Of a DNA stretch of 64,000 nt, positions 16,927 through 34,757 are shown one piece after another. The stretch spans positions 168,515 through 232,514 of the IMG/VR virus record IMGVR_UViG_3300028416_000004; one strand, given 5' to 3'. Position 1 is the stretch's first letter. Each line of letters opens with the position of its first letter. Below the pieces are notes generated by a model that worked only from the letters and a program-made list of their open reading frames with translations, did not search any database and had not been told where the DNA came from. Both the position numbers and the translations under genes were made by a program.

Positions 16927-18147
16927 TTATAACAAATTAAAATAGTTGTTTGTAGTAGGGTCGTATTTTAATTCAGAACTATTTCCACCATTAAATAAAT
17001 TATGGATTAATTTATCGTATGTTTTTGATATTAATGGGTTTGATACATGATATCTCCATAAAGATTGTTTATTACGTTCCTTATAGTATTCCAGATTTTT
17101 ATCGTGGTTTTCCAATATCCAGTTTAACATTTCACCACCTTTTCTTGAATCTGAGTTTTCATAATAATAACCTATATCTTTACACATTGGTGCGTTATGT
17201 AATACAGGATAACCCATATACGCAACATCCAAATAAAGATAGTTTAATGGGTTCATAATTTGATGAGAAACAACAATATCCAAAAACTGAGATACAACAT
17301 AAGAAGTTTGATATCTATGTTCCATTGTTACTTTTTTGTCCTTATATAAGTCCAAACTTTTAATAATTGATATGAATGGTGGATTTTTATCCAAACCACC
17401 TTTTTCGTGTTTTCCGTTTGTTATCATCAACTTATCAATCTTATTTTTACCAATTTCTGTACGATAAGATTCTTCTGCAATTAAAGTTGGTATAACAGCG
17501 GTTTTAACCATATTTAAGTTTGGTTCCATAATACCAATAACCTTCTTTTCTTTTGTTGGGTCGTATCTATGGTCTTTTTTATATTTTCCTTCTTTGCTTA
17601 ATTTATTGATTGAGTTTAGGGATGAATCCAAGAAACTATTATCCCATAAGAAAGGTACACTTATTGCGTTTGTTCTATAAAGTGTTTTAAAGTAACCACT
17701 ATTATTATAATCTTGTTGTGGCACATACCAAACTTCATCAACACCTTCATCAACAATATGTGGCTTTCCTTCTTTAAATAACATCTCTTCAATGAATAAA
17801 ACATAATTGTTACCACACTTATAATTAATAACTTTATTGGTTGGTTTTTGTTTCTTAAAATCTTTAATTGTTTCGTTTGATATTTGTGCTCCCATGGATA
17901 TAATTAAATCCATTTCTCTGTATTTATCTTTTAATAACGAAACATTAATTCCATCGAAGTGTTTTGGTGGGTTATTTAAATCAATATCCAACGTATTCAA
18001 TAAATAAATTTGATAATTCTTTTTTGATTTTTTTAATAGGTTAATCATCATAAGGATGTTTAGTTTCATCCCATTTGTCCACATTGATTCTTTTATATCG
18101 TTTAATGCTATGGTAATACCTATTTTTATATTTTCTGTATCCATCAT
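16927..18147 (-). CDS. DUF2827-like putative glycosyltransferase-fold protein
   Basis: IGITI...WTNGMKLN, IGIMEPNLNMVKT and NPLNYLYLDVAYMGYPVLHNAPMCKDIGYYYE match DUF2827 as recalled (no search run). Confidence 0.7.
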   Translation of the reverse strand: MMDTENIKIGITIALNDIKESMWTNGMKLNILMMINLLKKSKKNYQIYLLNTLDIDLNNPPKHFDGINVSLLKDKYREMDLIISMGAQISNETIKDFKKQKPTNKVINYKCGNNYVLFIEEMLFKEGKPHIVDEGVDEVWYVPQQDYNNSGYFKTLYRTNAISVPFLWDNSFLDSSLNSINKLSKEGKYKKDHRYDPTKEKKVIGIMEPNLNMVKTAVIPTLIAEESYRTEIGKNKIDKLMITNGKHEKGGLDKNPPFISIIKSLDLYKDKKVTMEHRYQTSYVVSQFLDIVVSHQIMNPLNYLYLDVAYMGYPVLHNAPMCKDIGYYYENSDSRKGGEMLNWILENHDKNLEYYKERNKQSLWRYHVSNPLISKTYDKLIHNLFNGGNSSELKYDPTTNNYFNLL

Positions 18148-18380
18148 ACTATTCTTGGTTTTTTTGTGTTTTTATAGATATCAGAGTTAAATTTCTTCAA
18201 GTCATCTAATGAAATATTTAGTTTTTTTCTCCACTTTGTTATAACGTGTTCGTAACCATTATTATATAACTCACATTCTTCTAAAACTGGGTTATCAACA
18301 CCTACTTCATCTATATCATAAGATGGGTCCGAAATTAAATATAAATCTCTTGTTATCTTATAATAAATATCTTTTTCCAT
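18144..18380 (-). CDS. Small hypothetical protein
   Basis: 78-aa ORF whose stop overlaps the DUF2827 start by 4 nt. Confidence 0.6.
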   Translation of the reverse strand: MEKDIYYKITRDLYLISDPSYDIDEVGVDNPVLEECELYNNGYEHVITKWRKKLNISLDDLKKFNSDIYKNTKKPRIV

Positions 18381-18418
18381 AACTTTTAAACCTTTAAAAA
18401 TAAATATAAGGGAATAAA

Positions 18419-18446
18419 AAAAGGTCTAAATAATTTTAGACCTTTT
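18419..18446 (-). terminator. Intrinsic terminator closing the adhesin cassette array
   Basis: AAAGGTCTAAA-TAAT-TTTAGACCTTT hairpin with an A-run on the + strand (U-tract on the minus transcript), just after the 18466 stop. Confidence 0.75.
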
Positions 18447-18465
18447 ATATTGTTTTTTTTATTTA

Positions 18466-19152
18466 TTATAATCCAAATCTTCCTTTGGTTGTGTTATAAT
18501 TTTGTAATACTTCACTATCTGTTAACGCTCTATTGTAAATTAAAGTATTACCAATTTTTTTATCACTAGCAACATAACTACCACCTGGATAACTATTAAT
18601 AGATATACCTTGTGTTGTTTGTGCTTGACTACTAGAATTAGAAGACCCAAACAAAACTCCATTATGATATAGTGATACTGTAGATGTACCATTATAAGTA
18701 CCAACTATATTGTGCCAATTACCATCTTCTAAATCTGTTTTTAATATTTTAGGGGTTGCAGTACCATAAAAAAACTGTATACCACTATTCTCATAAAACC
18801 AGTATGTTCTAGAGTTAATACCTAAACCCTTACTTAATAAAACTTTATTATTAGATAATAAATTGAATTTAACCCACATAGAAACTGAAACAGAGATGGT
18901 ATTTAAAGAATCTGAATTTGATATTGAAACATAATCATTCACACCATCAAATGACACAATTCCTCCATTATCAGTTAAGTATGTTACACCATTGGTTAAT
19001 GTACCATCATTATTATTTGATGTTAAATCATTCCAAATAGTACCTGTACCTGGATATGATAATGTATTTCCTGCATCTAAATGTAACACTAACCCATCTG
19101 TTATTATATTTGATGTTTGTCTTGGTCTCACCCCTACTCTTGTTTGTGCCAT
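18466..19152 (-). CDS. LamG/concanavalin A-like lectin-domain protein (putative receptor-binding or decoration protein)
   Basis: GLVLHLDAG...SYPGTGTIWNDL, FDGVNDYV, SVSMWVK, WHNIVGTY and IYNRALTDSEV. Confidence 0.85.
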   Translation of the reverse strand: MAQTRVGVRPRQTSNIITDGLVLHLDAGNTLSYPGTGTIWNDLTSNNNDGTLTNGVTYLTDNGGIVSFDGVNDYVSISNSDSLNTISVSVSMWVKFNLLSNNKVLLSKGLGINSRTYWFYENSGIQFFYGTATPKILKTDLEDGNWHNIVGTYNGTSTVSLYHNGVLFGSSNSSSQAQTTQGISINSYPGGSYVASDKKIGNTLIYNRALTDSEVLQNYNTTKGRFGL

Positions 19153-19175
19153 AATATTTTGTTTTTTAATTTATA

Positions 19176-19835
19176 TTATTTTTGTTTTCCGTTTCCTGAA
19201 TTGTATAGTTGTGATACTTCTGTTGGTGTTAGTTCTCTGTTCCAAATACCTATTTCATCCATATTACCATTTAAGAATTGACTAGATGTTCTCCTACTTA
19301 ATATAAAACCATTTACAAAACCCAAAGATGTACAATCAGTGAATGTTGTTGTACCAGCAGAAATTAAATTACCATCCATATACATATTTAATAATTTAGT
19401 TGACTCATTCCAAGCGAAAGCAACATGTCTCCAAACATTATTACCTATAGTTAAACTTTGTGATAAATAACCCCCATTTGTTTTGAATGCGTATAAAATT
19501 ATTGATGTAAATTGGAAAGTAAAACCCATAGACCCATTTGAACCGAAATTAGGTGTTTGAAAAAAACAGGCCGTACCTGTATTATTTTTATACACCCATC
19601 CACTTACCGTAAAATCTCCAGTAATACCAACATCACCTGTGTATTGTACATAATCATTAACACCATCAAACTTAAATCCTTGATTAATTTTACCTGTGTC
19701 ATATGTTGTTCCATTAATTAATGTTAAATCGTGTCCATTCCCTGTTTGGTCTATTGGTGTTCCATCAGCTCTATAATAAGCCAATAATCCATCCCATATA
19801 CCAGGTCTTCTAACCCCCACTCTTGTTTGTGCCAT
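19176..19835 (-). CDS. LamG/concanavalin A-like lectin-domain protein
   Basis: FDGVNDYV, FTVSGWVY, WRHVAF, LYMDG-like MYMDG and GNMDEIGIWNRELT. Confidence 0.85.
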   Translation of the reverse strand: MAQTRVGVRRPGIWDGLLAYYRADGTPIDQTGNGHDLTLINGTTYDTGKINQGFKFDGVNDYVQYTGDVGITGDFTVSGWVYKNNTGTACFFQTPNFGSNGSMGFTFQFTSIILYAFKTNGGYLSQSLTIGNNVWRHVAFAWNESTKLLNMYMDGNLISAGTTTFTDCTSLGFVNGFILSRRTSSQFLNGNMDEIGIWNRELTPTEVSQLYNSGNGKQK

Positions 19836-19879
19836 TTTTTATATTGTTTTAATTTTATTTGTTATTTTTAAAGAAAAAA

Positions 19880-19905
19880 AAAGGGTTTAAATAAATAAAC
19901 CCTTT
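19880..19905 (-). terminator. Intrinsic terminator-like hairpin
   Basis: AAAGGGTTTA-N6-TAAACCCTTT 10-bp stem with an A-run on the + side. Confidence 0.65.
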
Positions 19906-19922
19906 GTTTAATCTTTTAATTT

Positions 19923-20129
19923 TTAGATTACCTCTTCAGTTGATGTCCATTCAGGTCCTTCACAAATTGTAATCATTTCTTCTTTTGTGTAATCTGTGAA
20001 TGAATCACCTTCAACGATGAATTTTGTTCCATCGATTGACTTTCTTACTGTATCAGCTGTTGAATAACCTGTACATAATGAAAAGTCGAATGTTGTAATC
20101 TCTGCGATGTCTTTAATTGCGTATCCCAT
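19923..20129 (-). CDS. Small acidic protein (putative fibre partner/chaperone)
   Basis: 68 aa; RKSIDGTKF...EW pattern; lies between adhesin genes. Confidence 0.65.
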   Translation of the reverse strand: MGYAIKDIAEITTFDFSLCTGYSTADTVRKSIDGTKFIVEGDSFTDYTKEEMITICEGPEWTSTEEVI

Positions 20130-20222
20130 TTTTTTTGTTTTTAATTAATTATTTGTTATTTTATTCAATTATAAATATCTACCAATTTTTAATAATAGAG
20201 ATATTTATATTTTTTTTTTTTT

Positions 20223-21656
20223 TTAAATTCCACCACCATCGGTGATTGTCCATAAATCACTTAAAATTAAGTTTGATTTTGCTGCTTCAGCTGGACTTCC
20301 TATTGTGTATTTGGACGTACCAAAGTTAACAGACAAACCACTTACGGGGTTAAGTGCGTTCCATGCAACTAATAACTTATCATATTCAGTTGTTGTTATA
20401 GTTGAACCTCTTAGGAAATCTTTCATATTAGAAACAGTAGATATATCCCAAGTGTCTAATCCAACAACATCACACACACCTAAACCATAAAATGGTTCAT
20501 ACATAATAACTGGTCCAGATGTTCTTATTGTAATACCTGTAACATCAATATAATCAGCACCACACCCATTAAACATACCAGCGTATCTATTACCAAATGT
20601 TGTACAATTACTTAAATCCCAACCACTTACATTTAATGATGTTAAATTAACTGTGGGTGAGAAGGTATTAGATGTTGAAGTGACTTGAGAAACATCCCAT
20701 CCTGTTAAATCTAAATCGCCTGATATACCACAACCACGGAACATACCAATAATATTAGTGAATGGTACTGTTATATCTTCAATACCAGTTATTGTGGTTA
20801 AATTAGGTGTAGCTTGGAAGGTACTTGAGAAATTAACACCTAGTGTTCTAAAAGTAACTCCACTTACATCAACAGAAGTCAATGATATGTTATAGTAGAA
20901 CATTTGTCTGAAATCACTACAATTAGATAAATCCATTCCTGACATATCTAAAGATGTTAATGATGTACAACCTCTAAAAGTTTGGTACATAGTATATACT
21001 TTAGAAGTGTTAAGTGTGTTAAACCCTGTTACTGTAGTTAATGAGGTACAATTATAAAATACCTCTCTAAATTGAACATTTGAAGTTGTGTTTAATTTAC
21101 ATCCAGTAAAATCTATTGAAGTTAATGATGTACAAGATTGGAAACCACCAGTATAACCCCAACCAAAAGAAGTACAAGAAGTTAAATCCCAACCAGCTAA
21201 AGACATTGTGGTTAATGATGTACAACCATTAAAAGCATTTGCTAATGTATTAACTAATGATGTATTTGGAATATCTGTGGCATAAATTTCTAAATTACTA
21301 CACCCTTGGAAAGAAGTACCCATACTTCTCCATTCATTATAACCCCACTGATTAACTGACATCAATTTTTCTCTATCAGTACCATTAAATTTAGGCCAAG
21401 GTAAATTACCTAAGACTTTAATTGTATAAATTCCTGGTGTTGAATAGACGTGAGTTAAATCAGTATCATTATATGATGTAATTGTTGATGTTGTACCATC
21501 ACCCCACTCAATCGTTGCATTATAAACACCTAAATTTCCAGCACCTAAAATAAATGTATCACTCGCACTACCAGCATTTTCAGTGTTTATTGTAAATATA
21601 AATTTTCTTTTTTCCAAGGAACCATCTTTGATTCCAACTCTTATCTGTGCTGCCAT
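20223..21656 (-). CDS. DUF285/BspA-like leucine-rich-repeat surface protein with N-terminal PKD-like domain
   Basis: IEWGDG...THVYSTPGIYTIKV (PKD-like), VNQWG, and repeated ~25-aa units (F..CTSLT.LD.SGWD.S.V). Confidence 0.8.
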   Translation of the reverse strand: MAAQIRVGIKDGSLEKRKFIFTINTENAGSASDTFILGAGNLGVYNATIEWGDGTTSTITSYNDTDLTHVYSTPGIYTIKVLGNLPWPKFNGTDREKLMSVNQWGYNEWRSMGTSFQGCSNLEIYATDIPNTSLVNTLANAFNGCTSLTTMSLAGWDLTSCTSFGWGYTGGFQSCTSLTSIDFTGCKLNTTSNVQFREVFYNCTSLTTVTGFNTLNTSKVYTMYQTFRGCTSLTSLDMSGMDLSNCSDFRQMFYYNISLTSVDVSGVTFRTLGVNFSSTFQATPNLTTITGIEDITVPFTNIIGMFRGCGISGDLDLTGWDVSQVTSTSNTFSPTVNLTSLNVSGWDLSNCTTFGNRYAGMFNGCGADYIDVTGITIRTSGPVIMYEPFYGLGVCDVVGLDTWDISTVSNMKDFLRGSTITTTEYDKLLVAWNALNPVSGLSVNFGTSKYTIGSPAEAAKSNLILSDLWTITDGGGI

Positions 21657-21658
21657 AA

Positions 21659-21880
21659 TTATTCTGTTATTTCTTCTTCTTCATTGTTATCAACATCAAT
21701 TCCATAAACATTTAATAACTCTGTTTTCCAAGATGTTTCATCATCGAATATTGTGTGATTCGGTAAACCTGTTTCGGTTTGTTGTGGTGGGTCAGTTTTT
21801 CCGTAGTGAACAATTGAATTATCTTCATTTGTTGCAATCCACCATTTTTCATTCATTTCTGTTTTTGTTACTATTATCAT
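21659..21880 (-). CDS. Small acidic protein, translationally coupled to the DUF285 gene
   Basis: 73 aa with an acidic tail; its stop is 2 nt before the 21656 start. Confidence 0.65.
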   Translation of the reverse strand: MIIVTKTEMNEKWWIATNEDNSIVHYGKTDPPQQTETGLPNHTIFDDETSWKTELLNVYGIDVDNNEEEEITE

Positions 21881-21908
21881 AATTTATTTTTTTATATAAA
21901 TATCATAT

Positions 21909-21933
21909 AAAAAGGGAGATATTCACCTCCCTT
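21909..21933 (-). terminator. Intrinsic terminator after BspA-like gene 2
   Basis: AAGGGAG-N8-CTCCCTT hairpin; the + strand A-run is a U-tract on the minus transcript. Confidence 0.75.
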
Positions 21934-21942
21934 CATTTTTTT

Positions 21943-22056
21943 TTATTAAACCGTTACAGTCCATCCTTTTGATGTTGCTATAGCAATATCTTCAGGAGTT
22001 AAATCAGCTGTACCAGGGTTATACCTAACATCTATTGTTTGAGATGTTGCGTTACC
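21943..22056. repeat. 114-bp perfect direct repeat, copy 1 (3' end of BspA-like gene 2)
   Basis: Identical by eye to 24501-24614 (offset 2558). Confidence 0.9.
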
Positions 22057-24144
22057 TAGGTTGTTAAATATGTTTATTAAAGCCAATCTAGACAATTTGT
22101 TTGTATTATAACTATGTGATTTAGTTAAACCAAAAATATTAGATTCAGATAATTCAAAATTACTTCTTAACATAAGGTTAGCACTTGTTACGTTAGACAT
22201 ATCTAAACTACCAATTTTTCTTAGTTCTATACACCTGTCAAAAGTATAAGTCACATTTGTCGTTAAAGAAAAATCCAAATCAGGAATAATTTCAATTTTA
22301 CTAGAATTAAATAAATAATGTAAATTTGATTGTGAATTACTTGTATTGATTTGTGGTATAGTTTTTAAACCTGTACCTATAAACATTGCGTATATATTTG
22401 CACTATCTGTGTTAAAGTCTGATGGTAATTCTCTTAATGATGAACAACTATGGAACATATAACTCATATTTGAAACACCTGAAGTATTAATTAAACCATT
22501 TGGAAATCCTTCTAATGAACTACAATATATAAACATATAGAATGTTGTAGTACAATTTTGTAAATCTAATAATGGTAAGTTTTTTAAATTACTACATCCT
22601 TGGAAAACATTACTTAAAACTGTTGCAGATGAAGTATCTAAACCAGTAACAGTTTCTAAACTACTACAATTTAAAAACATTTTATTCATAGTAGTCACAT
22701 TACCAGTGTTTTGTAAATTAACTTCTTTTATCTTATTACTACCATCAAACATTTGTATTGTACTTGTACAAGAAGTTAAATCCAATGATATTTTTTCTAA
22801 TGAAGAACAATCTTTAAACATATAATCACATTTCGTTGAGTTTGAAGTATCAAACCCTTCAGGTAATTCTAATATACCTGAATTAAAAAACATATATTGC
22901 ATATTTGTAACACTGTCTGTGTTTAATAAATGTATTTTTCTTAAAGATGAACAATAACCAAACATACCATACATATTTGTACAACCACTAGTATCAAAAT
23001 CTTTAGGTATTTCTAATAACGAATTACAACTATGAAACATATAACCCATATTTGAAACACCAGATGTGTTAATTAAACCATTTTCAAATCTAACAATAGA
23101 AGAACAACGAACAAACATATAGTATGCTGTAGTACAAGAAGTAAAATCTATTTGTGGTACATCAATTAAACTAGAGCAACTTTCAAATAAATTACTTAAA
23201 TTTGTTGCAGATGAAGTATCTAAACCTGTTACAGTTTCTAAACTACTACAACCTTTAAACATTTTATTCATGTTTGTCACATTACCAGTATTTTGTAAAT
23301 TAGCTTCTTTTATCTTATTACTACCCTCAAAAATTTGTACTGTATTTGTACAAGAAGTTAAATCTAACGATATTTTTTCTAATGAAGAACAATTTTTAAA
23401 CATACTACCACATTCCGTTAGGTTTGAAGTGTCAAAATCAGATGGTAACTCTATTAAATTAGAACACCCATTAAACATACTAGTACCATTTGTAATGTTT
23501 GTCATATCAAATGATACCAATTTTTTAATTTTTGAATTAACAAAAAGACTAGTCGCATTAGTTATACTATGTGAACCAATAAATTCGATTTGTTCCATTT
23601 TTTTATGGTACGCACTCCCAGGTCTAAAAATACTTATATTTTGACCAGCTATTTTAACATCCAAAATATTAGAATAAGTAGCTACGTTTAATTCAGATTG
23701 ATAAGCGTAAGCTAAATCAAATTTAGTTAATGCACCTGGTACTTGTGGTGTTATTTTAACAATTACTTGTCTATATCCTTCAGATGTTAATGTTGACTCA
23801 TCAAGGTCTTCCCAATTCAATACATGATTTACTCTGTGAGTCGCACTTGTTTTTGATATACCATCATAATTAATAATGTTTCCATCACCCCAATCAACAG
23901 TAAAATCATCATTAACTGCAAAACCAACATAACTTGGTGTGTTTTCATATACACTAACCAACATGTAAACAACTTCATCACCATTATTAACTTCAGGCAA
24001 CGTTAACCAATCACTTGGTCTCACATAAGTATCATTAAATGTTGTTGTTTTTTCATATGTATAATTTAATTTATTATATCTTACCGTAGCATTCGGTAAG
24101 TACATATATTTTGGGGCTTGAACCCCTCCTACTACTTGTGCCAT
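21946..24144 (-). CDS. BspA/DUF285-like leucine-rich-repeat adhesin, paralog 2
   Basis: 732 aa; DWGDG beta-domain followed by ~23-aa MF..CSSL..L..LDTS..TNM repeats; paralog of 24504..26726. Confidence 0.85.
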   Translation of the reverse strand: MAQVVGGVQAPKYMYLPNATVRYNKLNYTYEKTTTFNDTYVRPSDWLTLPEVNNGDEVVYMLVSVYENTPSYVGFAVNDDFTVDWGDGNIINYDGISKTSATHRVNHVLNWEDLDESTLTSEGYRQVIVKITPQVPGALTKFDLAYAYQSELNVATYSNILDVKIAGQNISIFRPGSAYHKKMEQIEFIGSHSITNATSLFVNSKIKKLVSFDMTNITNGTSMFNGCSNLIELPSDFDTSNLTECGSMFKNCSSLEKISLDLTSCTNTVQIFEGSNKIKEANLQNTGNVTNMNKMFKGCSSLETVTGLDTSSATNLSNLFESCSSLIDVPQIDFTSCTTAYYMFVRCSSIVRFENGLINTSGVSNMGYMFHSCNSLLEIPKDFDTSGCTNMYGMFGYCSSLRKIHLLNTDSVTNMQYMFFNSGILELPEGFDTSNSTKCDYMFKDCSSLEKISLDLTSCTSTIQMFDGSNKIKEVNLQNTGNVTTMNKMFLNCSSLETVTGLDTSSATVLSNVFQGCSNLKNLPLLDLQNCTTTFYMFIYCSSLEGFPNGLINTSGVSNMSYMFHSCSSLRELPSDFNTDSANIYAMFIGTGLKTIPQINTSNSQSNLHYLFNSSKIEIIPDLDFSLTTNVTYTFDRCIELRKIGSLDMSNVTSANLMLRSNFELSESNIFGLTKSHSYNTNKLSRLALINIFNNLGNATSQTIDVRYNPGTADLTPEDIAIATSKGWTVTV

Positions 24145-24184
24145 AATTTTTTATTTTTTTAATTAATTTGTTATTGTTTTTTTA

Positions 24185-24415
24185 TTATAATGTAGTTTCT
24201 TCTTCTGAAATATTATCTTCTTCTTCCTCTTCAGGTTTATTGAATATATCAATAAATCCTTCAGGTTCATCATCATACCATTTCCATCCATCAACTGGAT
24301 AGTTGTATGTATCTTTTTGTTCTTTTAATAAAGAATAATCACCATTATACACCGCATTCGGTGCATAATACCAACCTTCTTCGGTTTCTTTGTAAAATCC
24401 TAGTTTTAATTCCAT
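24185..24415 (-). CDS. Small acidic aromatic-rich partner protein, copy 2
   Basis: 76 aa; near-identical to 26756..26980 (FYKETEEGWYYAPNAVYNGDYSLLKEQKDTY). Confidence 0.75.
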   Translation of the reverse strand: MELKLGFYKETEEGWYYAPNAVYNGDYSLLKEQKDTYNYPVDGWKWYDDEPEGFIDIFNKPEEEEEDNISEEETTL

Positions 24416-24461
24416 TTTTCTTTTTTTTATTTTTTAATTTGTTATTTTTTTTATAAATATG

Positions 24462-24490
24462 AAAAAAGAGAGGGAGAATACCCCCTCTTT
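24462..24490 (-). terminator. Intrinsic terminator after BspA-like gene 1
   Basis: AGAGGG (24469-74) pairs with CCCTCT (24483-88); the A6 on + is a U-tract on the minus transcript. Confidence 0.75.
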
Positions 24491-24500
24491 AATTATTAAA

Positions 24501-24614
24501 TTATTAAACCGTTACAGTCCATCCTTTTGATGTTGCTATAGCAATATCTTCAGGAGTTAAATCAGCTGTACCAGGGTTATACCTAACATCTATTGTTTGA
24601 GATGTTGCGTTACC
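24501..24614. repeat. 114-bp perfect direct repeat, copy 2 (3' end of BspA-like gene 1)
   Basis: Identical by eye to 21943-22056. Confidence 0.9.
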
Positions 24615-26726
24615 CAAGTTGTTGAAAATGTTAACTAATTCAGTTCTAGATAACTTACCATGAAGATAAGTATGTGATTTAGTTAAACCATATATATCAG
24701 ACTTACCAATACCATAGTTATTTCTGAACATATTTGTTGCGTTAGTTACAGATGAAAAATCCAAACTACCTATTTTTCTAAGTCTTGAACAATAACCAAA
24801 CATTTCTCTACTATCTGTAATATTGGAAGTATCCAAATCAGGAATTTCTTCAATACCTGATTGTCTAAACATATAATAACCACTAGTTATATTTGAAGTA
24901 TTAATAGATGGTATTGTTTTTAAATTAGATGTTGTTTGAAACATATAAAGCATATTTGTTGCACTATCTGTATTAAAATCAGATGGTATTTCTATTAAAT
25001 TTGAACAATAACCAAACATACTTTGCATATTCGTTACACCTGATGTATTAATTATATCATTATCAAATCTTATGATTGAATTACACCCATAAAACATACT
25101 TGAAGTCCTTGTACAACTTTGTAAGTTAATTTTAGGTAAATCCATTAATTTATTACAACCATAAAACATTTGATGTGTTATTGTCATTGAACTTGTATCT
25201 AAACCAGTTATTTTAACTAAGTTTGAACAGCCGTAAAAAGCATCTTGTCCACTTGTTACATTGGATGTATTTATTAAATTAATTTCTCTTATCTGAGAAG
25301 AATTTTTAAACATATTGTGCATACTTGTACAACTAGATAAGTCTAATGTTGGTAACGTTTTTAATTTATAACAATGCGAAAACATCTCTCCAGCGTGTGT
25401 TATATTAGAGAAATCTAAATCAGGAATTTCTTCAATATCTGCTTGTCTAAACATATAATAACCACTAGTTATATTTGAAGTATTTAATAAAGGTATTCTT
25501 CTTAAAGAACTACATTTATTAAACATATAAGTCATATTTGTTGCACTAGATGTATCAAAATCTTTAGGTATTTCTATTAAATTTGAACAATGACCAAACA
25601 TACCTTGCATATTCGTTACACCTGATGTATTAATTATATCATTATCAAATCTTATGATTGAATTACACGCATAAAACATACTTGAAGTCCTTGTACAACT
25701 TTGTAAGTTAATTTCAGGTAAATCCATTAATTTATTACAACCATAAAACATTTGATGTGTTATTGTCATTGAACTTGTATCTAAACCAGTTATTTTAACT
25801 AAGTTTGAACAGCCGTAAAAAGCATCTTGTCCATTTGTTACATTGGATGTATTTATTAAATTAATTTCTCTTATCTGAGAAGAATGTTTAAACATATTTT
25901 GCATACTTGTACAACTTGTCAAATCTAATGTTGGTAATTTTTCTAATGAACTACAATACGCAAACATGTCATATACATTTGTTAAACTTGTTAAATCCAT
26001 ATCTTCTGGTAACTCTATTAATTTAGTACATTGTCTAAACATATAATAACCATTAGTGATATTAGACATATCTAAAGAAACTATTTTTTTAATAGTTGAA
26101 CCATTAAACATACTGTTACTAGCCACAATACTATTTGAACCAACAAACTCAAATTGTTCGAATTTTGGGTTATTACCACCACCAACTTTTAAATAATTGA
26201 TGTTTTGTCCAGCCATTTTCATATCCAAAAGACCTGAAAGACCTACACCACCATATACACCATTAAGCATTGATTGATAGAATGATTGATTATTGAAATG
26301 AGTTAAACCACCAGGAACTTGTGGTGTGATTTTAACAATTGCTTGTCTATATCCTTCTGATGTTAATGTTGATGGGTCAATGTCATCCCAATTTATTGAA
26401 TAACCTGTTTTACCATCAACAGCATTCACACTTGTACTATTTTGGTCATAATTAATAATATTTCCATCACCCCAATCAACAGTATAATCACCTCTAACTG
26501 AGAATACGATACTATTTGGGTTATTTTCATAAATTGCAACCAACATGTAAATTACTTCATCACCTTCATTTACCGCTGGTAAATCCAACCAATCCGCTGG
26601 TCTTGTATAAGTTTTGTATGGTGTTGTATCGATTGGATAATTATAATTTAATTTATTATATCTTACCGTAGCGTTAGGTAAGTAAATATATTTAGGTGCT
26701 TGTACACCTCCTACTACTTGTGCCAT
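24504..26726 (-). CDS. BspA/DUF285-like leucine-rich-repeat adhesin, paralog 1
   Basis: 740 aa; same N-terminus (MAQVVGGVQAPKY) and C-terminus as 21946..24144; LRR-like repeats. Confidence 0.85.
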   Translation of the reverse strand: MAQVVGGVQAPKYIYLPNATVRYNKLNYNYPIDTTPYKTYTRPADWLDLPAVNEGDEVIYMLVAIYENNPNSIVFSVRGDYTVDWGDGNIINYDQNSTSVNAVDGKTGYSINWDDIDPSTLTSEGYRQAIVKITPQVPGGLTHFNNQSFYQSMLNGVYGGVGLSGLLDMKMAGQNINYLKVGGGNNPKFEQFEFVGSNSIVASNSMFNGSTIKKIVSLDMSNITNGYYMFRQCTKLIELPEDMDLTSLTNVYDMFAYCSSLEKLPTLDLTSCTSMQNMFKHSSQIREINLINTSNVTNGQDAFYGCSNLVKITGLDTSSMTITHQMFYGCNKLMDLPEINLQSCTRTSSMFYACNSIIRFDNDIINTSGVTNMQGMFGHCSNLIEIPKDFDTSSATNMTYMFNKCSSLRRIPLLNTSNITSGYYMFRQADIEEIPDLDFSNITHAGEMFSHCYKLKTLPTLDLSSCTSMHNMFKNSSQIREINLINTSNVTSGQDAFYGCSNLVKITGLDTSSMTITHQMFYGCNKLMDLPKINLQSCTRTSSMFYGCNSIIRFDNDIINTSGVTNMQSMFGYCSNLIEIPSDFNTDSATNMLYMFQTTSNLKTIPSINTSNITSGYYMFRQSGIEEIPDLDTSNITDSREMFGYCSRLRKIGSLDFSSVTNATNMFRNNYGIGKSDIYGLTKSHTYLHGKLSRTELVNIFNNLGNATSQTIDVRYNPGTADLTPEDIAIATSKGWTVTV
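24830..25940. repeat. Intragenic tandem duplication with 582-nt (194-aa) period
   Basis: For example 25025 aligns to 25607 and 24841 to 25423; a ~330-bp core differs at only about 5 positions. Confidence 0.85.
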
Positions 26727-26755
26727 AATTTTCTATTTTTTTAATTAATTTGTTA

Positions 26756-26980
26756 TTATAATTCACCTTCAGGTGTTTCTTCAGTTATTTCTTCTTCAGG
26801 TTTATTGAATATATCAATAAATCCTTCAGGTTCATCATCATACCATGACCACCCATCCGTTGGATAAGTGTAGGTATCTTTTTGTTCTTTTAATAAAGAA
26901 TAATCACCATTATACACTGCATTTGGTGCATAATACCAACCTTCTTCGGTTTCTTTGTAAAATCCTGGTTTTGTTTCCAT
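26756..26980 (-). CDS. Small acidic aromatic-rich partner protein, copy 1
   Basis: 74 aa; paralog of 24185..24415 (offset about 2565). Confidence 0.75.
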   Translation of the reverse strand: METKPGFYKETEEGWYYAPNAVYNGDYSLLKEQKDTYTYPTDGWSWYDDEPEGFIDIFNKPEEEITEETPEGEL

Positions 26981-27012: not shown

Positions 27013-27591
27013 TTATAGTTTTATTAACACATCATGAGTAATTAATCGAATTAATTTTGTTGTTTCAGGGTTATTTTTATGTGTTTTTCTTATAGAAGAA
27101 TAAAACCCCATTCCAGACCAAGCATATTCAACCAATATTCCGTTTGGTTTTAACTCATCAACAATTTTTTGATACATACCCATCAATTCATTTTCATTCT
27201 TAAATGGTGTGTAACAATAAACAATATCATATTTACCATAATTATGATTCATAATATCATCAACATACAAATCGATATTATTATCCCAATAACCTTTTAG
27301 GTTTTTATTAAAAAAATCAACATACTCTTTATACTTCTCAACACCAAAAAAATTAAAAGTTTTGTCCTCAAATTTTTTGGATTCAATATAAAAGTTATAC
27401 ATCATTGTACCCAAACCAAATCCAGCATCACATACGTTAAATGTTGTTTTTGATGGTGTTAAATTTATCATTCTGGGAAAAATATTTTCGAATTGGGTTG
27501 TTGTTGGTTCGATATAATACCACTCATTGGTGTTATCAACAAAATCATTATTGTTTAATTCTTGTGATTTTATTTTATATTCTTTTTTCAT
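27013..27591 (-). CDS. Class I SAM-dependent methyltransferase
   Basis: VCDAGFGLG (motif I), FFGVEK, YVDDI and YDIVYCY. Start placed at Met 27591 because the listed ATG at 27627 lies inside a terminator hairpin. Confidence 0.75.
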   Translation of the reverse strand: MKKEYKIKSQELNNNDFVDNTNEWYYIEPTTTQFENIFPRMINLTPSKTTFNVCDAGFGLGTMMYNFYIESKKFEDKTFNFFGVEKYKEYVDFFNKNLKGYWDNNIDLYVDDIMNHNYGKYDIVYCYTPFKNENELMGMYQKIVDELKPNGILVEYAWSGMGFYSSIRKTHKNNPETTKLIRLITHDVLIKL

Positions 27592-27604
27592 AAGTGTTAA
27601 AAAT

Positions 27605-27640
27605 AAAAAGAGGGAGGAGTATTTCATCCTCCCCTTTTTT
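27605..27640 (-). terminator. Intrinsic terminator after the long fibre gene
   Basis: GGGAGGA (27612-18) pairs with TCCTCCC (27627-33), flanked by A- and T-runs. Confidence 0.8.
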
Positions 27641-27694: not shown

Positions 27695-30445
27695 TTATGC
27701 TAATGGAGTAAAGTTACCATAATAATCAGGGTTTACAGCAATTGCTTCTTGTCCGTAAATCACAACTGATGCTCCAGTTTCAGGTGCTACATTGAACGTG
27801 AAGGTACCTTGAGTGTTACCTTTAGCATCTACTACTGAACTGAAAGTATAATCAACATCTCTTTCTTGTAATAAACCATTTAAGTAGATTGCTCCACTTC
27901 CATTAATTAATACACTGAAATCTACAGTTACACCATCTCCGACTGCACTATTTAAAATCACAAACTTCCCGACATTAACAGCGTTTAAAATCATAGATTT
28001 GATTTCAACTAATGCTCCGTTAACACCATCTTTGATAGCTTGGTCGATTGAGTTTTGAACTGAAATCTCAGCAGATAACACAACTTCTAATGAAGCGTCA
28101 GCAGCAAGTCTTGCAGCTTTCTCTACAGAGTCAGCAGCTTCGAATGCAGCTGTTACAGCAGCGTCACCAGCAATTCTTGCGTTTTGTTCAGCTAAGTCAG
28201 CAGATTCTCTAGCAGCAACTTCAGTTGAGATATCAGCGTTTACTTTAGCTTCTAATGAAGCGTCAGCAGCTTCTCTAGCAGCAACTTCAGTTGAGATATC
28301 AGCGTTTACTTTACCTTCTAGTGAAGCGTCAGCAGATTCTCTAGCAGCAACTTCAGTTGATAAAGCAGCGTCATTACTCAATACGTAAGAAGCAAATGCT
28401 TGGTCGTTTTCAGTATCAACAGAGTTGATTAGTGTTACGATTTCAGCAAATGAATCTTTATCAGCATCAGAAGCCTCTAAGATAGCATCAATTCTACTTT
28501 TTTCAGTAGATACTTTAGCCTCTAATGAAGCGTCTCCTGAAACTCTCGCTGATTCTTCAGCAGATACGTCAGCATCGATTTTAGCTTCTAATGAACCATC
28601 AGCAGCAACTCTTGAACTAGCTTCAGAACTGATTGCAGCTTCTCTAGCAGCAACTTCAGTAGAGTATTCAATAGCGTGAGTTGATTCCTCAGTAGACAAT
28701 CTTAATTCTAATGAAGCATCAGCAGCAGCTCTAATACTAGCTTCAGCAGATACGTCACCTGTTACAGTAGCATCAAAGTTATCTAAAATTCCTTTAGTAA
28801 TGAATGATAAAGCATCATATCCAGCTAAACTATCTGGTTGAACACCAGCTTTGTTTAAACCTTCGAATGTTCTTTCTCCAGCTGTACCTTCAGCAATAAC
28901 ATCTTTCATTCTAATGTTGTTATCACCATCAACTTCGATTGTTACATCATCAGTTAAAGGTAATGCATCGATTTCAGCTTCCAATGAAGTATCACTAGCT
29001 AAACGAGTTGATTCTTCAGCATCTAATTCACTAACAACTTCTGCGAATGAATCGATTGAGTTTAAGTCAGTGTTAGCGATGATTGAAGAAACCTCACTTG
29101 ATAATACTGTAGCGATTGAATCTTCAGCTTCAGTAGCTCTTGAAATCTCAGCAGCTAATGCAACATCTAATGAACCATCAGCAGCAATTCTTGCAGCTTC
29201 TTCACTAGCTATAGATTCATTTAAATCCTTAGACTCAAGTTCGATTTTTTCATTTAATGAAGCATCAGCAGATACTCTTGAACTTACTTCAGATTCGATA
29301 GCTGTATCATGCTGAGCATCTTTAGCTGTAGCTCTAGCTATCTCAGCGTTTAATTCATTTTGAAGGTCAGTATCTGTATTTATCGCTCTAGTTATTTCGT
29401 CATCGATTTTAGCTTCTAATGAACCATCAGTAGCAATTCTTGCAGATTCTTCAGCTGACATGTCAGCATCGATTTTAGCTTCTAATGAACCATCAGCAGC
29501 AATTCTTGCAGATTCTTCAGCTGACATGTCAGCATCGATTTTAGCTTCTAATGAAGCGTCAGCAGCTTCTCTAGTAGCTTTCTCTACAGAGTCAGCAGCT
29601 TCGAATGCAGCCGTTACAGCAGCATCACCAGCAATTCTTGCGTTTTGTTCAGCTAAGTCAGCAGATTCTCTAGCAGAAACCTCAGTTGAGATATCAGCGT
29701 TTACTTTACCTTCTAATGAAGCGTCACCTGAAATTCTTGAAGATACTTCAGTTGATAAAGCAGCATCATTAGATAATACATAAGATGCAAATGCTTGGTC
29801 ATTTTCAGTATCAACAGAGTTGATTAATGTTACGATTTCAGCGAATGAATCTTTATCAGCATCAGAAGCCTCTAAAATAGCATCAATTCTACTTTTTTCA
29901 GTAGATACTTTAGCCTCTAATGAAGCGTCTCCTGAAACTCTCGCTGATTCTTCAGCAGATACGTCAGCATCGATTTTAGCCTCTAATGAAGCGTCTCCTG
30001 AAACTCTCGCTGATTCTTCAGCAGATACGTCAGCATCGATTTTAACTTCTAATGAACCTTCAGCATCTTTAGCTCTAGTAGTTTCATCACTGATTGATGT
30101 CTCTAATGAACCTTCAGCATCTTTAGCTCTAGCAACTTCAGCATCGATAGCTGCATCATGTTCAGCATCTTTTGCTTCAGCTCTAGCAACTTCAGCAGCG
30201 ATTTCAGCATCATGTTCAGCATCTTTTGCTTCAGCTCTACTCTTCTCGTTGGTAATTGCTTGTTCTAAATTTTGTAAGTCGTCAACTAACCCAGGTAAAT
30301 CTGATTTCTCAATACCAATTGGTCTTAAAATTTCAGCATCAGTCAATTTACCGTCTGATTGTTTATTTAAGATAATCCTAGTTCCACCTGTAAAATTGTT
30401 TGTTGGCTCTACTGGTGCTTCTAATAAAAATAATCTATTTTCCAT
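27695..30445 (-). CDS. Long repetitive coiled-coil tail fibre/whisker-like protein
   Basis: 916 aa Ala/Glu/Ser-rich 18/21/22-aa repeats (EESAR.AAD.SLEAKID), DSFAEIV motifs, and a C-terminal IYLNGLLQ..DY..F..AP..G domain also seen twice in 31808..32521. Confidence 0.7.
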   Translation of the reverse strand: MENRLFLLEAPVEPTNNFTGGTRIILNKQSDGKLTDAEILRPIGIEKSDLPGLVDDLQNLEQAITNEKSRAEAKDAEHDAEIAAEVARAEAKDAEHDAAIDAEVARAKDAEGSLETSISDETTRAKDAEGSLEVKIDADVSAEESARVSGDASLEAKIDADVSAEESARVSGDASLEAKVSTEKSRIDAILEASDADKDSFAEIVTLINSVDTENDQAFASYVLSNDAALSTEVSSRISGDASLEGKVNADISTEVSARESADLAEQNARIAGDAAVTAAFEAADSVEKATREAADASLEAKIDADMSAEESARIAADGSLEAKIDADMSAEESARIATDGSLEAKIDDEITRAINTDTDLQNELNAEIARATAKDAQHDTAIESEVSSRVSADASLNEKIELESKDLNESIASEEAARIAADGSLDVALAAEISRATEAEDSIATVLSSEVSSIIANTDLNSIDSFAEVVSELDAEESTRLASDTSLEAEIDALPLTDDVTIEVDGDNNIRMKDVIAEGTAGERTFEGLNKAGVQPDSLAGYDALSFITKGILDNFDATVTGDVSAEASIRAAADASLELRLSTEESTHAIEYSTEVAAREAAISSEASSRVAADGSLEAKIDADVSAEESARVSGDASLEAKVSTEKSRIDAILEASDADKDSFAEIVTLINSVDTENDQAFASYVLSNDAALSTEVAARESADASLEGKVNADISTEVAAREAADASLEAKVNADISTEVAARESADLAEQNARIAGDAAVTAAFEAADSVEKAARLAADASLEVVLSAEISVQNSIDQAIKDGVNGALVEIKSMILNAVNVGKFVILNSAVGDGVTVDFSVLINGSGAIYLNGLLQERDVDYTFSSVVDAKGNTQGTFTFNVAPETGASVVIYGQEAIAVNPDYYGNFTPLA
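28110..29995. repeat. Nested intragenic repeats (63/66-nt units; ~450-bp block duplicated at 1395/1461-nt offset)
   Basis: 28411 aligns to 29806 (offset 1395) and 28116 to 29577 (offset 1461); 63-nt tandem units at ~29403-29540 and ~29900-30050. Confidence 0.85.
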
Positions 30446-34742: not shown

Positions 34743-34757
34743 ATTTTTTTATTTTGT

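What the first reader, a model, noticed from the sequence alone, without database searches (positions are those of the whole stretch)
19126..26726. Five adhesins with three different folds share a ~9-residue N-terminal tag, MAQxx(V/G)G(V/I)
Seen: MAQTRVGVR (19152), MAQTRVGVR (19835), MAAQIRVGIK (21656) and MAQVVGGVQ (24144, 26726). Similarity stops right after the tag between fold types. The two LamG genes also share about 25 nt around the start (CTCTTGTTTGTGCCAT on +). The tag has no hydrophobic core, so it is not a Sec or lipoprotein signal. Inference: a universal beta-strand docking peptide (strand addition to a fibre or capsid socket) or an assembly-targeting signal.
Basis: partly seen in the sequence, partly recalled or inferred. 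Interest (0 to 1): 0.7.

Follow-up and report, generated by a model that had tools for sequence, protein, structure and literature searches.

The report
Shared N-terminal tag on phage adhesins
Five neighbouring adhesin genes of an uncultured 232-kb marine tailed phage start with a short peptide that stays fixed while the proteins behind it are swapped. It most likely plugs interchangeable lectin-like and leucine-rich-repeat adhesins onto the virion, much like the docking peptides known in Klebsiella and E. coli phages.

Summary
Five minus-strand ORFs begin MAQTRVGVR (19152, 19835), MAAQIRVGIK (21656) and MAQVVGGVQ (24144, 26726), and no other ORF in the 232.5-kb genome does.

- There are two fold classes, not three: LamG/ConA-like jelly roll and DUF285 leucine-rich repeat.
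- MAQVVGGVQ heads a conserved leader of about 35 residues. Its likeness to MAQTRVGVR is no better than the best chance pairs in this genome.

The RVG[VI]R tag is clearly selected as a peptide:
- Its codons vary synonymously over 33 distinct gene starts.
- It is identical on cargos only about 31-39% identical.
- It recurs on LamG-A, LamG-B, double-LamG, AbfB-like and DUF285 cargos.
- A second lineage (GC 42%) puts its own variant, MAIINGRG[KR]VGIRR, on both LamG and AbfB-like proteins.
- A cargo 87% identical to the window's LamG-A sits in another fibre locus with a different N-terminus. The break lies exactly at the tag/cargo border.

AlphaFold models leave both tags unstructured. In other phages the same cargo domains are fused inside large virion or fibre proteins.

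Best reading (about 0.5): a docking peptide that attaches exchangeable adhesins to a virion scaffold. The socket is unknown and nothing here shows binding. I rate it a new variant of a known kind, of moderate interest.

The parts
19126..19152 (-). Tag A, MAQTRVGVR, on LamG-A
   Evidence: Codons ATG GCA CAA ACA AGA GTA GGG GTG AGA.
18466..19152 (-). LamG-A adhesin, 228 aa (lectin-like jelly roll, ends ...RFGL)
   Evidence: Pfam Laminin_G_3 E=1.8e-16. In the AF2 model residues 1-15 have pLDDT about 35 and no secondary structure; confident strands begin about residue 50. Foldseek matches lectin-like jelly-roll domains at E about 1e-9.
19809..19835 (-). Tag A, MAQTRVGVR, on LamG-B
   Evidence: Synonymous differences from the LamG-A tag: GTG/GTA and GTT/GTG.
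19176..19835 (-). LamG-B adhesin, 219 aa (ends ...GKQK)
   Evidence: Pfam Laminin_G_3 E=2.3e-19. 31% identical to LamG-A, but 9 of 9 in the tag.
21627..21656 (-). Tag A variant, MAAQIRVGIK
   Evidence: One extra Ala, Ile for Val, Lys for Arg.
20223..21656 (-). 477-aa adhesin: tag, PKD-like segment, DUF285 LRR
   Evidence: Pfam DUF285 E=2.3e-22, weak PKD. Shares only its LRR part with the 740-aa protein.
24040..24144 (-). Tag B (MAQVVGGVQ) with its leader, about 35 residues, on the 732-aa protein
   Evidence: By homology with the modelled 740-aa leader.
21946..24144 (-). 732-aa DUF285 LRR adhesin
   Evidence: Pfam DUF285 E=2.4e-47. 58% identical to the 740-aa paralogue.
26622..26726 (-). Tag B with its leader, about 35 residues, on the 740-aa protein
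   Evidence: In the AF2 model residues 1-35 have pLDDT below 50. High-confidence (pLDDT above 90) residues start about residue 40, at YTRPxDWLxLP.
24504..26726 (-). 740-aa DUF285 LRR adhesin
   Evidence: Pfam DUF285 E=2.6e-58.
26756..26980 (-). 74-aa acidic small ORF ahead of the 740-aa gene (GFYKETEEGWYY family)
   Evidence: Its paralogue lies at 24185-24415. The same small-ORF-plus-adhesin unit is duplicated in relative L014. No Pfam or PHROG hit.
24185..24415 (-). 76-aa acidic small ORF ahead of the 732-aa gene
   Evidence: 26.4-bit N-terminal match to the 74-aa ORF.
21659..21880 (-). 73-aa acidic small ORF ahead of the 477-aa gene
   Evidence: No family hit.
19923..20129 (-). 68-aa small ORF ahead of the LamG pair (DGTK family)
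   Evidence: 40% identical to the 85-aa ORF of LamG clusters L052/L058. Conserved in L013 and L014.
27695..30445 (-). 916-aa Ala/Glu/Ser-rich coiled-coil fibre at the head of the cluster; candidate scaffold, unproven
   Evidence: GC 39% against 27%. Homologue heads the same cluster in L014. In L056 it is followed directly by DUF2827 with no cassette.
27013..27627 (-). 204-aa methyltransferase-like ORF between the fibre and the adhesins
   Evidence: Weak Methyltransf_31 hit, E=0.004. Conserved position in L014.
16927..18147 (-). DUF2827 gene at the far border of the cassette
   Evidence: Pfam E=4.3e-94. Same border in L014 and L056.
18419..18446 (-). Terminator-like hairpin after LamG-A
   Evidence: Others lie at 19880-19905, 21912-21933, 24465-24490 and 27611-27634. 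Twenty were found against 2.9 expected.

Best explanation
The tag is a docking (anchor) peptide. It is a flexible N-terminal extension of about 9-20 residues with core [KR]-V-G-[VI]-[RK]. It lets separately encoded adhesin modules attach non-covalently to a scaffold on the tail, fibre or baseplate of this large marine myovirus. The modules are LamG lectin-like jelly rolls, an AbfB-like jelly roll and DUF285 leucine-rich repeats.

Because only the tag has to fit the scaffold, cargo genes can be duplicated, swapped or lost as cassettes.

Shown: peptide-level conservation, modular exchange at the tag/cargo border, sharing across cargo families, lineage-specific tag variants, and absence of predicted structure.

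Inferred: that the proteins are in the virion, that the tag binds a socket, and which protein carries the socket.
For: 1. Peptide-level selection. Over 33 distinct tagged gene starts, Val6 is GTA/GTG/GTT, Gly7 is GGA/GGG/GGT and Arg5 is AGA/AGG, while the residues stay fixed.

2. The tag is conserved far beyond its cargo.
- LamG-A and LamG-B are 31% identical overall but 9 of 9 in the tag.
- The LamG-B of a distant relative, whose other shared proteins are 25-45% identical, is 39% identical in cargo and 9 of 9 in the tag.
- Between-cargo pairs average 87% identity at residues 1-9 and 15% at residues 10-20. That set was picked by a tag pattern, so the figure is illustrative only.

3. It is found by homology alone. 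Of the 120 best LamG-A homologues, 25 carry M[AG][QK]xRVG[VI][RK]. It is an extension of about 9 residues ahead of the conserved xDGLVL core.

4. Several cargos carry it.
- Relative L013 has eight tagged genes in 6.8 kb, including a 280-aa AbfB-like protein starting MTKTRVGVRNGALV.
- P0195 and the 1091-aa P0306 (..TKVGVRQR..) repeat this.

5. An independent lineage does the same. L068 (GC 42%) puts MAI[IV]NGRG[KR]VGIRR on one AbfB-like and two LamG proteins at two separate loci. So tags group by genome and cargos group by family.

6. A natural tag swap.
- P0001 is 87% identical to the window's LamG-A from residue 16 onward, but begins MSVVGGPRLGIV.
- It lies behind a beta-fibre 93% identical at its C-terminus to the genome's 1459-aa fibre.
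- The same locus has a LamG-B cargo behind MSGVVGPRF instead of MAQTRVGVRPR.

7. Both tag regions are unstructured in AF2 models.

8. Fused against split forms.
- LamG-A modules form the C-terminal part of the 1058-aa S-PM2 'virion structural protein' p176.
- Flavobacterium phage immuto has LamG 'structural proteins' directly behind a fibre-like gene.
- The cargos match internal or C-terminal parts of 850-1850-aa PHROG virion proteins.
- The AbfB-like module sits inside 500-6000-aa proteins in nearly all of the 150 best hits. Homology starts only after the tag.

9. In L070 a KVGVRR-tagged LamG lies between gp25-like and gp6/J-like baseplate genes.

10. Precedent. N-terminal peptides of 7-29 residues dock secondary receptor-binding proteins in K1-5/K1E/SP6, KP34 (MALxxLV) and KP32. 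In KP32, deleting the peptide abolishes incorporation (PMC6872550; PMC13352976).
Against: - No direct evidence shows that any of the five proteins is in the virion. The phage is uncultured.
- No socket was found. PF07880 (T4 gp9/10 N-terminal domain) is absent by sequence. The fibre-plus-LamG-A complex prediction gave no answer.
- L056 keeps the coiled-coil fibre but has no adhesin cassette at this locus. The fibre therefore does not need the adhesins, and its role as scaffold is a guess.
- L021 places a MSVVGGPR-type LamG next to a MAKTRVGVR-type LamG. Tag and locus are not strictly linked.
- Low pLDDT at an N-terminus can also come from a ragged alignment.
- The MAQVVGGVQ proteins may carry an unrelated leader.
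Confidence: 0.5

Rival explanations
1. The tag is a recognition signal for an assembly factor or modifying enzyme rather than a virion socket. Candidates are the small acidic proteins encoded ahead of each cassette, acting as chaperones. Others are the neighbouring methyltransferase-like or DUF2827 proteins, or a protease that removes the tag.
For: - Each cassette is preceded by a 68-76-aa acidic ORF, and the unit of small ORF plus adhesin is duplicated as one.
- Tag A is basic (two or three Arg), and three of the four small ORFs have acidic tails.
- A methyltransferase-like gene and DUF2827 flank the cassette in G000 and L014.
- The peptide-level conservation fits any protein partner equally well.
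Against: - The small-ORF family follows the cargo type, not the tag. The GFYKE family goes with the 730-aa DUF285 proteins. The DGTK family goes with LamG, including untagged LamG clusters.
- DUF2827 stays beside the fibre in L056, where the cassette is missing.
- No cleavage motif is evident.
Confidence: 0.17
2. The conserved start is mainly a DNA-level feature: a short homology patch at cassette borders. It would promote recombination, duplication and exchange of adhesin genes, and the peptide would be a passenger.
For: - The region is built of cassettes with terminator-like hairpins between them (20 found against 2.9 expected).
- The whole cassette is absent in L056.
- The natural swap breaks exactly at the tag/cargo border.
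- Metagenome contigs hint at variants lacking one or two cassettes.
- The two LamG starts share 17 exact nucleotides.
Against: - Third codon positions vary freely while the residues are fixed. This is the opposite of what DNA-level selection predicts.
- The possible deletion joints lie in intergenic DNA (19174, 20150, 21909, 21938), not in the tags.
- The exact identity is too short (at most 17 nt) and the upstream leaders differ.
Confidence: 0.1
3. The tag belongs to the adhesin itself. It could be an oligomerisation strand or hairpin, or an edge strand that packs on the cargo in the mature protein. In that case it is not an address.
For: - Sequences such as RVGVR-NG-ALV look like a strand-turn-strand.
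- Many unrelated N-terminal leaders of DUF285 and AbfB-like proteins have alternating hydrophobic/Gly patterns: MANIIVSSGRMLG, MPFVGIGVTIGG, MRFGLGLGF.
Against: - The same tag sits on unrelated folds (jelly roll, LRR).
- Cargos work with other N-termini or with none. About 70% of LamG-A homologues have only about 10 residues ahead of the core.
- Models do not pack the tag on the domain.
Confidence: 0.1
4. The conservation reflects translation initiation or mRNA features of highly expressed late genes, such as an A-rich, unstructured start.
For: - MA[QK] starts use GCA CAA/AAA.
- The leaders are A-rich without a Shine-Dalgarno sequence.
Against: - This explains at most codons 2-4.
- The invariant part, R-V-G-[VI]-R, is G-rich and varies at synonymous sites.
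- Only these 5 of 245 ORFs carry it.
Confidence: 0.03

Closest known systems
Conserved N-terminal docking peptides of secondary receptor-binding proteins in branched RBP systems (K1-5/K1E/SP6 hepta- and undecapeptides; KP34-group MALxxLV; KP32 RBP2 first 29 residues; Menlow and PhiK64-1 groups)
   Same: - A very short N-terminal peptide is conserved within a phage group and differs between groups.
- It is followed by unrelated or rapidly exchanged receptor-binding modules.
- Several tagged genes lie side by side in the tail-fibre region (PMC6872550; PMC13352976).
   Different: - The cargos here are small lectin-like jelly rolls and LRR proteins, not trimeric beta-helix depolymerase tailspikes.
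- The host phage is a 232-kb marine myovirus.
- Up to eight tagged paralogues occur in a row.
- The tag is basic, whereas the Klebsiella peptides are reported to lack positive charge.
- No T4gp10-like branching domain or adaptor was detected.
- Binding is untested.
Detachable tip adhesins of T-even phages (gp38 of T2/T6/S16 bound to the gp37 fibre tip)
   Same: - A separately encoded small adhesin is carried non-covalently at a fibre end.
- The equivalent domain is fused to the fibre in other phages. Here, compare S-PM2 p176 with stand-alone LamG genes just behind fibre genes.
   Different: - gp38 uses a folded N-terminal attachment domain, not a 9-residue peptide (my own knowledge, not tested here).
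- There is no sequence or fold relation to LamG or DUF285.
T4 capsid-targeting sequence of internal proteins (IPI-III, Alt)
   Same: An N-terminal tag of about 10 residues is shared by otherwise unrelated proteins of one phage and directs them into the particle (my own knowledge).
   Different: - The T4 sequence is removed by the prohead protease at an L/I-x-E site. No such site follows the tags here.
- The cargos here are adhesin folds that are parts of fibre or virion proteins elsewhere, not internal head proteins.
Stand-alone and fused LamG 'structural proteins' of cultured marine phages (Synechococcus phage S-PM2 p176; Flavobacterium phage immuto gp049-051)
   Same: - Homologous LamG-A domain, 33-37% identity.
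- Position next to or inside fibre genes.
- Accompanied by the DGTK-type small ORF (immuto gp048).
   Different: They start MAEIHGPKVV or MPTAGGPNTV, or are internal modules. None carries the RVG[VI]R tag.

Membership tests
Branched-RBP 'conserved docking peptide' systems | Short N-terminal peptide conserved among receptor-binding proteins whose remaining sequence diverges | tested here: met
Branched-RBP 'conserved docking peptide' systems | Peptide is specific to a phage group and differs between groups | tested here: met
   MA[QK]TRVG[VI]R in the G000, L013 and L014 lineage. MAIINGRG[KR]VGIRR in L068. MPLQITNGVGKVGVRR in L070.
Branched-RBP 'conserved docking peptide' systems | A partner carrying a T4gp10-like branching domain or an adaptor protein | tested here: inconclusive
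   PF07880 was not found in the 232-kb record. That model covers only the gp9/10 N-terminal domain, and the record is 88% complete. No structural screen was possible.
Branched-RBP 'conserved docking peptide' systems | Peptide needed for incorporation of the protein into the virion | not testable with these tools
   The phage is uncultured. The one complex prediction allowed gave no answer.
Branched-RBP 'conserved docking peptide' systems | Tagged proteins are virion components | tested here: inconclusive
   Indirect only. Homologous domains are annotated as virion or structural proteins in S-PM2 and immuto and in PHROGs 8510 and 10356.
Sec / lipoprotein / Tat signal peptides | Hydrophobic h-region of 10 or more residues after a charged n-region; lipobox Cys; Tat RRxFLK plus h-region | tested here: not met
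   Direct reading of the sequences. The folded domain follows within 6-12 residues, with no h-region and no Cys.
T4-type capsid targeting sequence | N-terminal tag followed by an L/I-x-E prohead-protease site; cargo packaged inside the head | tested here: not met
   No such motif follows the tags. The cargos are adhesin folds linked to fibre or baseplate genes.
Laminin_G_3 (PF13385) ConA-like lectin domain | Profile match above the gathering score, and a jelly-roll fold | tested here: met
   61.1 and 70.5 bits against a cut-off of 27.6. AF2 model pTM 0.76, and Foldseek E about 1e-9 to lectin-like jelly rolls.
DUF285 (PF03382) BspA-type leucine-rich repeat | Profile match above the gathering score | tested here: met
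   79.4, 160 and 195.4 bits against a cut-off of 25 for the 477-, 732- and 740-aa proteins.
DNA-level recombination linker (conserved boundary sequence) | Nucleotide conservation beyond what the encoded peptide requires | tested here: not met
   Four-fold degenerate sites of the tag vary freely among 33 gene starts.

The most novel reading that the evidence does not exclude
These marine phages may use a small code of N-terminal address peptides. MA[QK]TRVG[VI]R-type tags are seen behind the coiled-coil fibre. MSGVVGPR- and MSVVGGPR-type tags are seen behind the beta-fibre. MSVI..LTV-type tags are seen beside beta-fibre genes, and a LamG with such a tag follows one directly.

Each address would direct interchangeable, probably monomeric, lectin or LRR modules to a particular fibre or baseplate site. 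One virion could then display a mixed and quickly re-assortable set of adhesins. Moving a cargo between sites would need only a change of 10-15 codons, as in the natural swap seen for P0001.
Probability: 0.25. Interest if true: 0.7.

Novelty: new variant of a known kind. Interest (0 to 1): 0.45.

Why it matters
If the tag is a docking peptide, it marks the exchangeable host-recognition modules of a widespread group of uncultured marine phages. That would allow these modules to be catalogued from metagenomes by their first ten codons.

It would also extend the 'conserved peptide plus scaffold' design from enterobacterial podophages with enzymatic tailspikes to large myoviruses with lectin-like and leucine-rich-repeat adhesins.

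Finally, it gives a simple handle for experiments: fuse the tag to a reporter and find what it binds. Very few of these phages are in culture.

Tried and rejected
- Complex prediction: three copies of the coiled-coil fibre C-terminus (160 aa) with LamG-A gave no answer. It is not evidence either way.
- T4 gp9/10 N-terminal domain (PF07880) in the genome: no match.
- Foldseek of the DUF285 N-terminal domain model against the PDB: nothing below E=0.13.
- Relatives of the fibre C-terminus:
  - In viral contigs, only the same phage turned up.
  - In the protein collection, only two homologues turned up.
  - The two fragments holding a distant tagged LamG-B are 7-8% complete and had no fibre match.
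- Viral-contig scans:
  - For MAQVVGGVQ, only the same phage was returned.
  - For MSGVVGPRF, three records were returned, one of them the same phage as the window. The other two (L065, L067) were not examined.
- Pattern hits L006-L008 (MAQTRVGVK followed by a stop) lie in another frame inside a 294-296-aa ORF that I read as QueE-like. The high-GC hits L023, L026, L027, L038 and L049 are not in the adhesin context. I treat all of these as chance.
- Sec, lipoprotein, Tat and prepilin signals were considered and rejected on sequence. One bacterial LamG homologue, P0037, does have a prepilin-type N-terminus, but the phage tags do not resemble it.
- A sigma-70-type promoter scan gave fewer sites than shuffles, so it says nothing.
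- Literature searches for DUF285 in phages and for LamG in cyanophages found nothing on such a tag.
- Nearest cultured relatives, by baseplate wedge protein, are only 28-30% identical: Flavobacterium phage immuto and Microcystis phage Mel-JY01. The host remains unknown.

Full report
**Setting.** The window is bases 168,515-232,514 of a 232,514-bp IMG/VR virus record estimated 88% complete. GC is about 27%. It encodes a T4 gp6-like baseplate wedge protein. The nearest cultured relatives of that protein are only 28-30% identical: Flavobacterium phage immuto and Microcystis phage Mel-JY01. The same DNA occurs in many seawater metagenomes and in metatranscriptome libraries. This is therefore an uncultured large marine myovirus of unknown host.

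**The observation.**
- 228 aa at 18466-19152, MAQTRVGVRPR
- 219 aa at 19176-19835, MAQTRVGVRRP
- 477 aa at 20223-21656, MAAQIRVGIK
- 732 aa at 21946-24144, MAQVVGGVQAPKY
- 740 aa at 24504-26726, MAQVVGGVQAPKY

A six-frame scan of the whole genome finds the motif nowhere else. Only 4 of 245 non-overlapping ORFs start with MAQ. The two LamG genes share 17 exact nucleotides at the start.

In a composition-weighted comparison of residues 2-10 of all ORF pairs, the two LamG starts score 37.6 bits. The best unrelated pairs score 19.9 bits.

Two parts of the observation need correction:
- Pfam gives two fold classes, not three. The two small proteins are Laminin_G_3, and all three large ones are DUF285 BspA-type LRR.
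- MAQTRVGVR against MAQVVGGVQ scores 19.3 bits, level with four unrelated pairs. The claim that all five share one tag rests mainly on adjacency.
- In relatives, the MAQVVGGVQ proteins conserve a much longer leader (MAQVVGGVQAPKY[IM]Y[LI]PNAT[IV]RYNKL...), ahead of the YTRPxDWLxLP core shared by the wider family.

**The tag is selected as a peptide and is modular.**
- Among the 120 best homologues of LamG-A, found by homology alone, 25 begin M[AG][QK]xRVG[VI][RK]. The tag is an extension of about 9 residues ahead of the conserved xDGLVL core. Most other homologues have only about 10 residues there.
- Pattern scans of viral and metagenomic contigs, plus contexts of homologues, gave 33 distinct tagged gene starts. 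Four-fold degenerate positions vary (GTA/GTG/GTT, GGA/GGG/GGT, AGA/AGG) while the residues do not.
- The tag is identical on LamG-A and LamG-B, which are 31% identical overall.
- It is also identical on the LamG-B of a distant relative whose other shared proteins are 25-45% identical.
- In relative L013, eight consecutive genes carry it. These are LamG-A, LamG-B, a 450-aa double-LamG protein and a 280-aa AbfB-like protein.
- The AbfB-like case recurs in P0195 and, with a longer prefix, in the 1091-aa P0306.
- A different lineage, L068 at GC 42%, has its own variant, MAI[IV]NGRG[KR]VGIRR. It sits on one AbfB-like and two LamG proteins at two separate loci.
- L070 has MPLQITNGVGKVGVRR on a LamG gene lying between gp25-like and gp6/J-like baseplate genes.

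Tags therefore group by genome and cargos group by family. This is what is described for docking peptides of Klebsiella phage receptor-binding proteins (PMC6872550).

**A natural swap.** The genome has a second adhesin cluster, at G000 106,000-125,000. It holds beta-rich fibres of 669, 1459 and 698 aa and a 722-aa DUF285 protein starting MSVILVNNNRLTV. Its three LamG proteins start MSFHYSPKIV, MSGVVGPRFGIV and MATKGGLNIV.
- Metagenomic locus L058 is of this second type. Its fibre C-terminus is 93% identical to that of the 1459-aa fibre.
- Its third LamG, P0001, is 87% identical to the window's LamG-A from residue 16 to the end, but begins MSVVGGPRLGIV.
- Its LamG-B cargo follows MSGVVGPRF rather than MAQTRVGVRPR.

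So the cargo has moved between loci and the N-terminus was exchanged exactly at the tag border.

In the few contexts where an upstream fibre is visible, the tag types sort as follows:
- RVG[VI]R and MAQVVGGVQ tags follow the coiled-coil fibre.
- MSGVVGPR- and MSVVGGPR-type tags, and the MSVIVQGG-tagged LamG of L016, follow a beta-fibre.
- The 722-aa DUF285 protein (MSVILVNN...) lies directly downstream of the 669-aa fibre. That fibre ends differently, so the scan flagged no fibre context for it.

The sample is small. L021 is a counter-example, with both tag types on adjacent genes.

**Structure.**
- The AlphaFold2 model of LamG-A (72-sequence alignment, pTM 0.76) leaves residues 1-15 at pLDDT about 35 with no secondary structure.
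- The model of the first 215 residues of the 740-aa protein leaves residues 1-35 below pLDDT 50. High-confidence residues begin about residue 40.
- LamG-A matches lectin-like jelly-roll domains of trans-sialidases and of clostridial neurotoxin binding regions at E about 1e-9. This is a generic carbohydrate-binding fold and says nothing about toxicity.
- The DUF285 N-terminal domain has no clear PDB match.

**Link to the virion.** This evidence is indirect.
- LamG-A modules are fused in tandem at the C-terminal end of the 1058-aa S-PM2 protein p176, annotated 'virion structural protein'. A review states that S-PM2 structural proteins were identified by proteomics (PMC2984593). I could not check p176 itself.
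- In Flavobacterium phage immuto, three LamG proteins lie directly behind a tail-fibre-like gene. Two of them are annotated 'structural protein'.
- LamG-A, the AbfB-like cargo and the DUF285 cargos match internal or C-terminal stretches of PHROG families of 850-1850 residues. Two of these are annotated as virion structural proteins.
- In the 150 best representatives, the AbfB-like module almost always lies inside proteins of 500-6000 residues. Homology starts only after the tag.

This split-against-fused pattern is what one expects if the stand-alone modules rejoin a scaffold non-covalently.

**Anatomy of the locus.** Read on the minus strand, the order is:
1. 916-aa Ala/Glu/Ser-rich coiled-coil fibre (GC 39%)
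2. Terminator-like hairpin
3. Methyltransferase-like ORF
4. 74-aa ORF, then the 740-aa gene
5. 76-aa ORF, then the 732-aa gene
6. 73-aa ORF, then the 477-aa gene
7. 68-aa ORF, then the 219- and 228-aa genes
8. 78-aa ORF, then DUF2827

Relative L014 has the same plan with different cargos. In L056 the fibre is followed directly by DUF2827. The cassette block is therefore an accessory insertion.

Contigs from two DNA runs hint at population variants lacking one or two cassettes, with joints in intergenic DNA. The matching sides are only 20-26 nt, so this is weak.

**Interpretation.** The best explanation is a docking peptide that fixes exchangeable adhesin modules to a scaffold on the tail, fibre or baseplate (confidence about 0.5).

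This matches a known principle:
- The 7- and 11-residue peptides of K1-5/K1E/SP6.
- MALxxLV of KP34-group phages.
- The first 29 residues of KP32 RBP2, whose deletion prevents incorporation.

It differs in several ways:
- The cargos are lectin-like and LRR modules rather than trimeric depolymerases.
- The virus is a large marine myovirus.
- Up to eight tagged genes occur in a row.
- The tag is basic.
- The partner is unknown. No gp10-like domain was detectable, and the one complex prediction allowed gave no answer.

Rivals:
- A signal for a chaperone or modifying enzyme (0.17). It is weakened because the small-ORF families follow cargo type, not tag.
- A DNA-level recombination patch (0.10). 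It is contradicted by the synonymous variation.
- An intrinsic oligomerisation or edge strand (0.10).
- A translation feature (0.03).

**Verdict.** This is a real, non-random and biologically meaningful feature. The claims of three folds, one universal tag and a length of 9 residues are overstated. I rate it a new variant of a known kind, with moderate interest.

Noticed in passing
G000:C1:106000-125000 (locus L052), outside the window: A second adhesin cluster in the same genome. It holds beta-rich fibres of 669, 1459 and 698 aa and a 722-aa DUF285 protein. It also holds three LamG proteins with other N-termini (MSFHYSPKIV, MSGVVGPRFGIV, MATKGGLNIV) and an 85-aa DGTK-family ORF. It is syntenic with L016 and L058.
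   Followed up: yes
window 27695-30445 (-): A 916-aa Ala/Glu/Ser-rich, highly repetitive coiled-coil protein forms a 39% GC island in a 27% GC genome. Its C-terminal beta domain resembles the two repeats of the 237-aa protein at 31808-32521, which has weak DUF2460/DUF7583 hits. Whether it is a whisker, a head fibre or a tail fibre is unknown.
   Followed up: partly
window 19923-20129, 21659-21880, 24185-24415, 26756-26980 (-): A small ORF of 68-76 aa precedes each adhesin cassette; three of the four have an acidic tail. The GFYKETEEGWYY family pairs with the 730-aa DUF285 genes. The DGTK family pairs with LamG genes here, in L052, L058, L068 and L070, and weakly in immuto gp048. None has a Pfam or PHROG match. 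They may be chaperones or adaptors.
   Followed up: partly
window 33609-37054 (-): Three paralogues of 377, 364 and 394 aa share an N-terminal module of about 45 residues (..KIN..SLW.A.TG.YSI..). YadA-head repeats are detected in the 364-aa protein (E=8e-13) and weakly in the 377-aa protein; the 394-aa protein has no Pfam hit. This looks like an ordinary anchor domain and is a useful contrast to the 9-residue tags.
   Followed up: no
window 18000-31000: Terminator-like hairpins are strongly enriched (20 against 2.9 expected). They sit between cassettes at 18419-18446, 19880-19905, 21912-21933, 24465-24490 and 27611-27634.
   Followed up: partly
window 19174/21938 and 20150/21909: Contigs of two seawater DNA runs join these intergenic points. 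That suggests population variants lacking either the 73-aa ORF, the 477-aa gene, the 68-aa ORF and LamG-B, or just the 73-aa ORF and the 477-aa gene. The matching sides are only 20-26 nt, so this may be cross-mapping from relatives. RNA-library contigs cover 18472-24089 without mismatches, but DNA carry-over is not excluded.
   Followed up: partly
upstream of all tagged starts, e.g. window 19153-19190: The leaders are A-rich (...AAAACAAAATATT ATG) with no Shine-Dalgarno sequence. Some contain TATAAAT-like elements resembling T4-type late promoters. The lack of a Shine-Dalgarno sequence may point to a Bacteroidota-like or similar host.
   Followed up: no
L021 (1384-bp metagenome contig): A LamG-A starting MSVVGGPRLGIP lies directly upstream of a LamG-B starting MAKTRVGVRPR. 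The two tag types can therefore occur in one locus.
   Followed up: no
L056 (8709-bp metagenome contig): A relative in which the coiled-coil fibre (48% identical at its C-terminus) is followed at once by DUF2827 and a DOT1-like methyltransferase, with no adhesin cassette. This marks the cassette block as an insertion hot spot.
   Followed up: yes
whole genome G000, e.g. 60493-61266, 150915-151484, window 60194-60547: Several small ORFs share an MKITK.EL.. start, at 18-20 bits. This may be a paralogous family or a composition effect.
   Followed up: no
window 27013-27627 and 16927-18147 (-): A methyltransferase-like ORF lies inside the cluster, and a DUF2827 gene (E=4e-94) lies at its border. 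Both are conserved in L014. They might modify the fibre or the adhesins.
   Followed up: no
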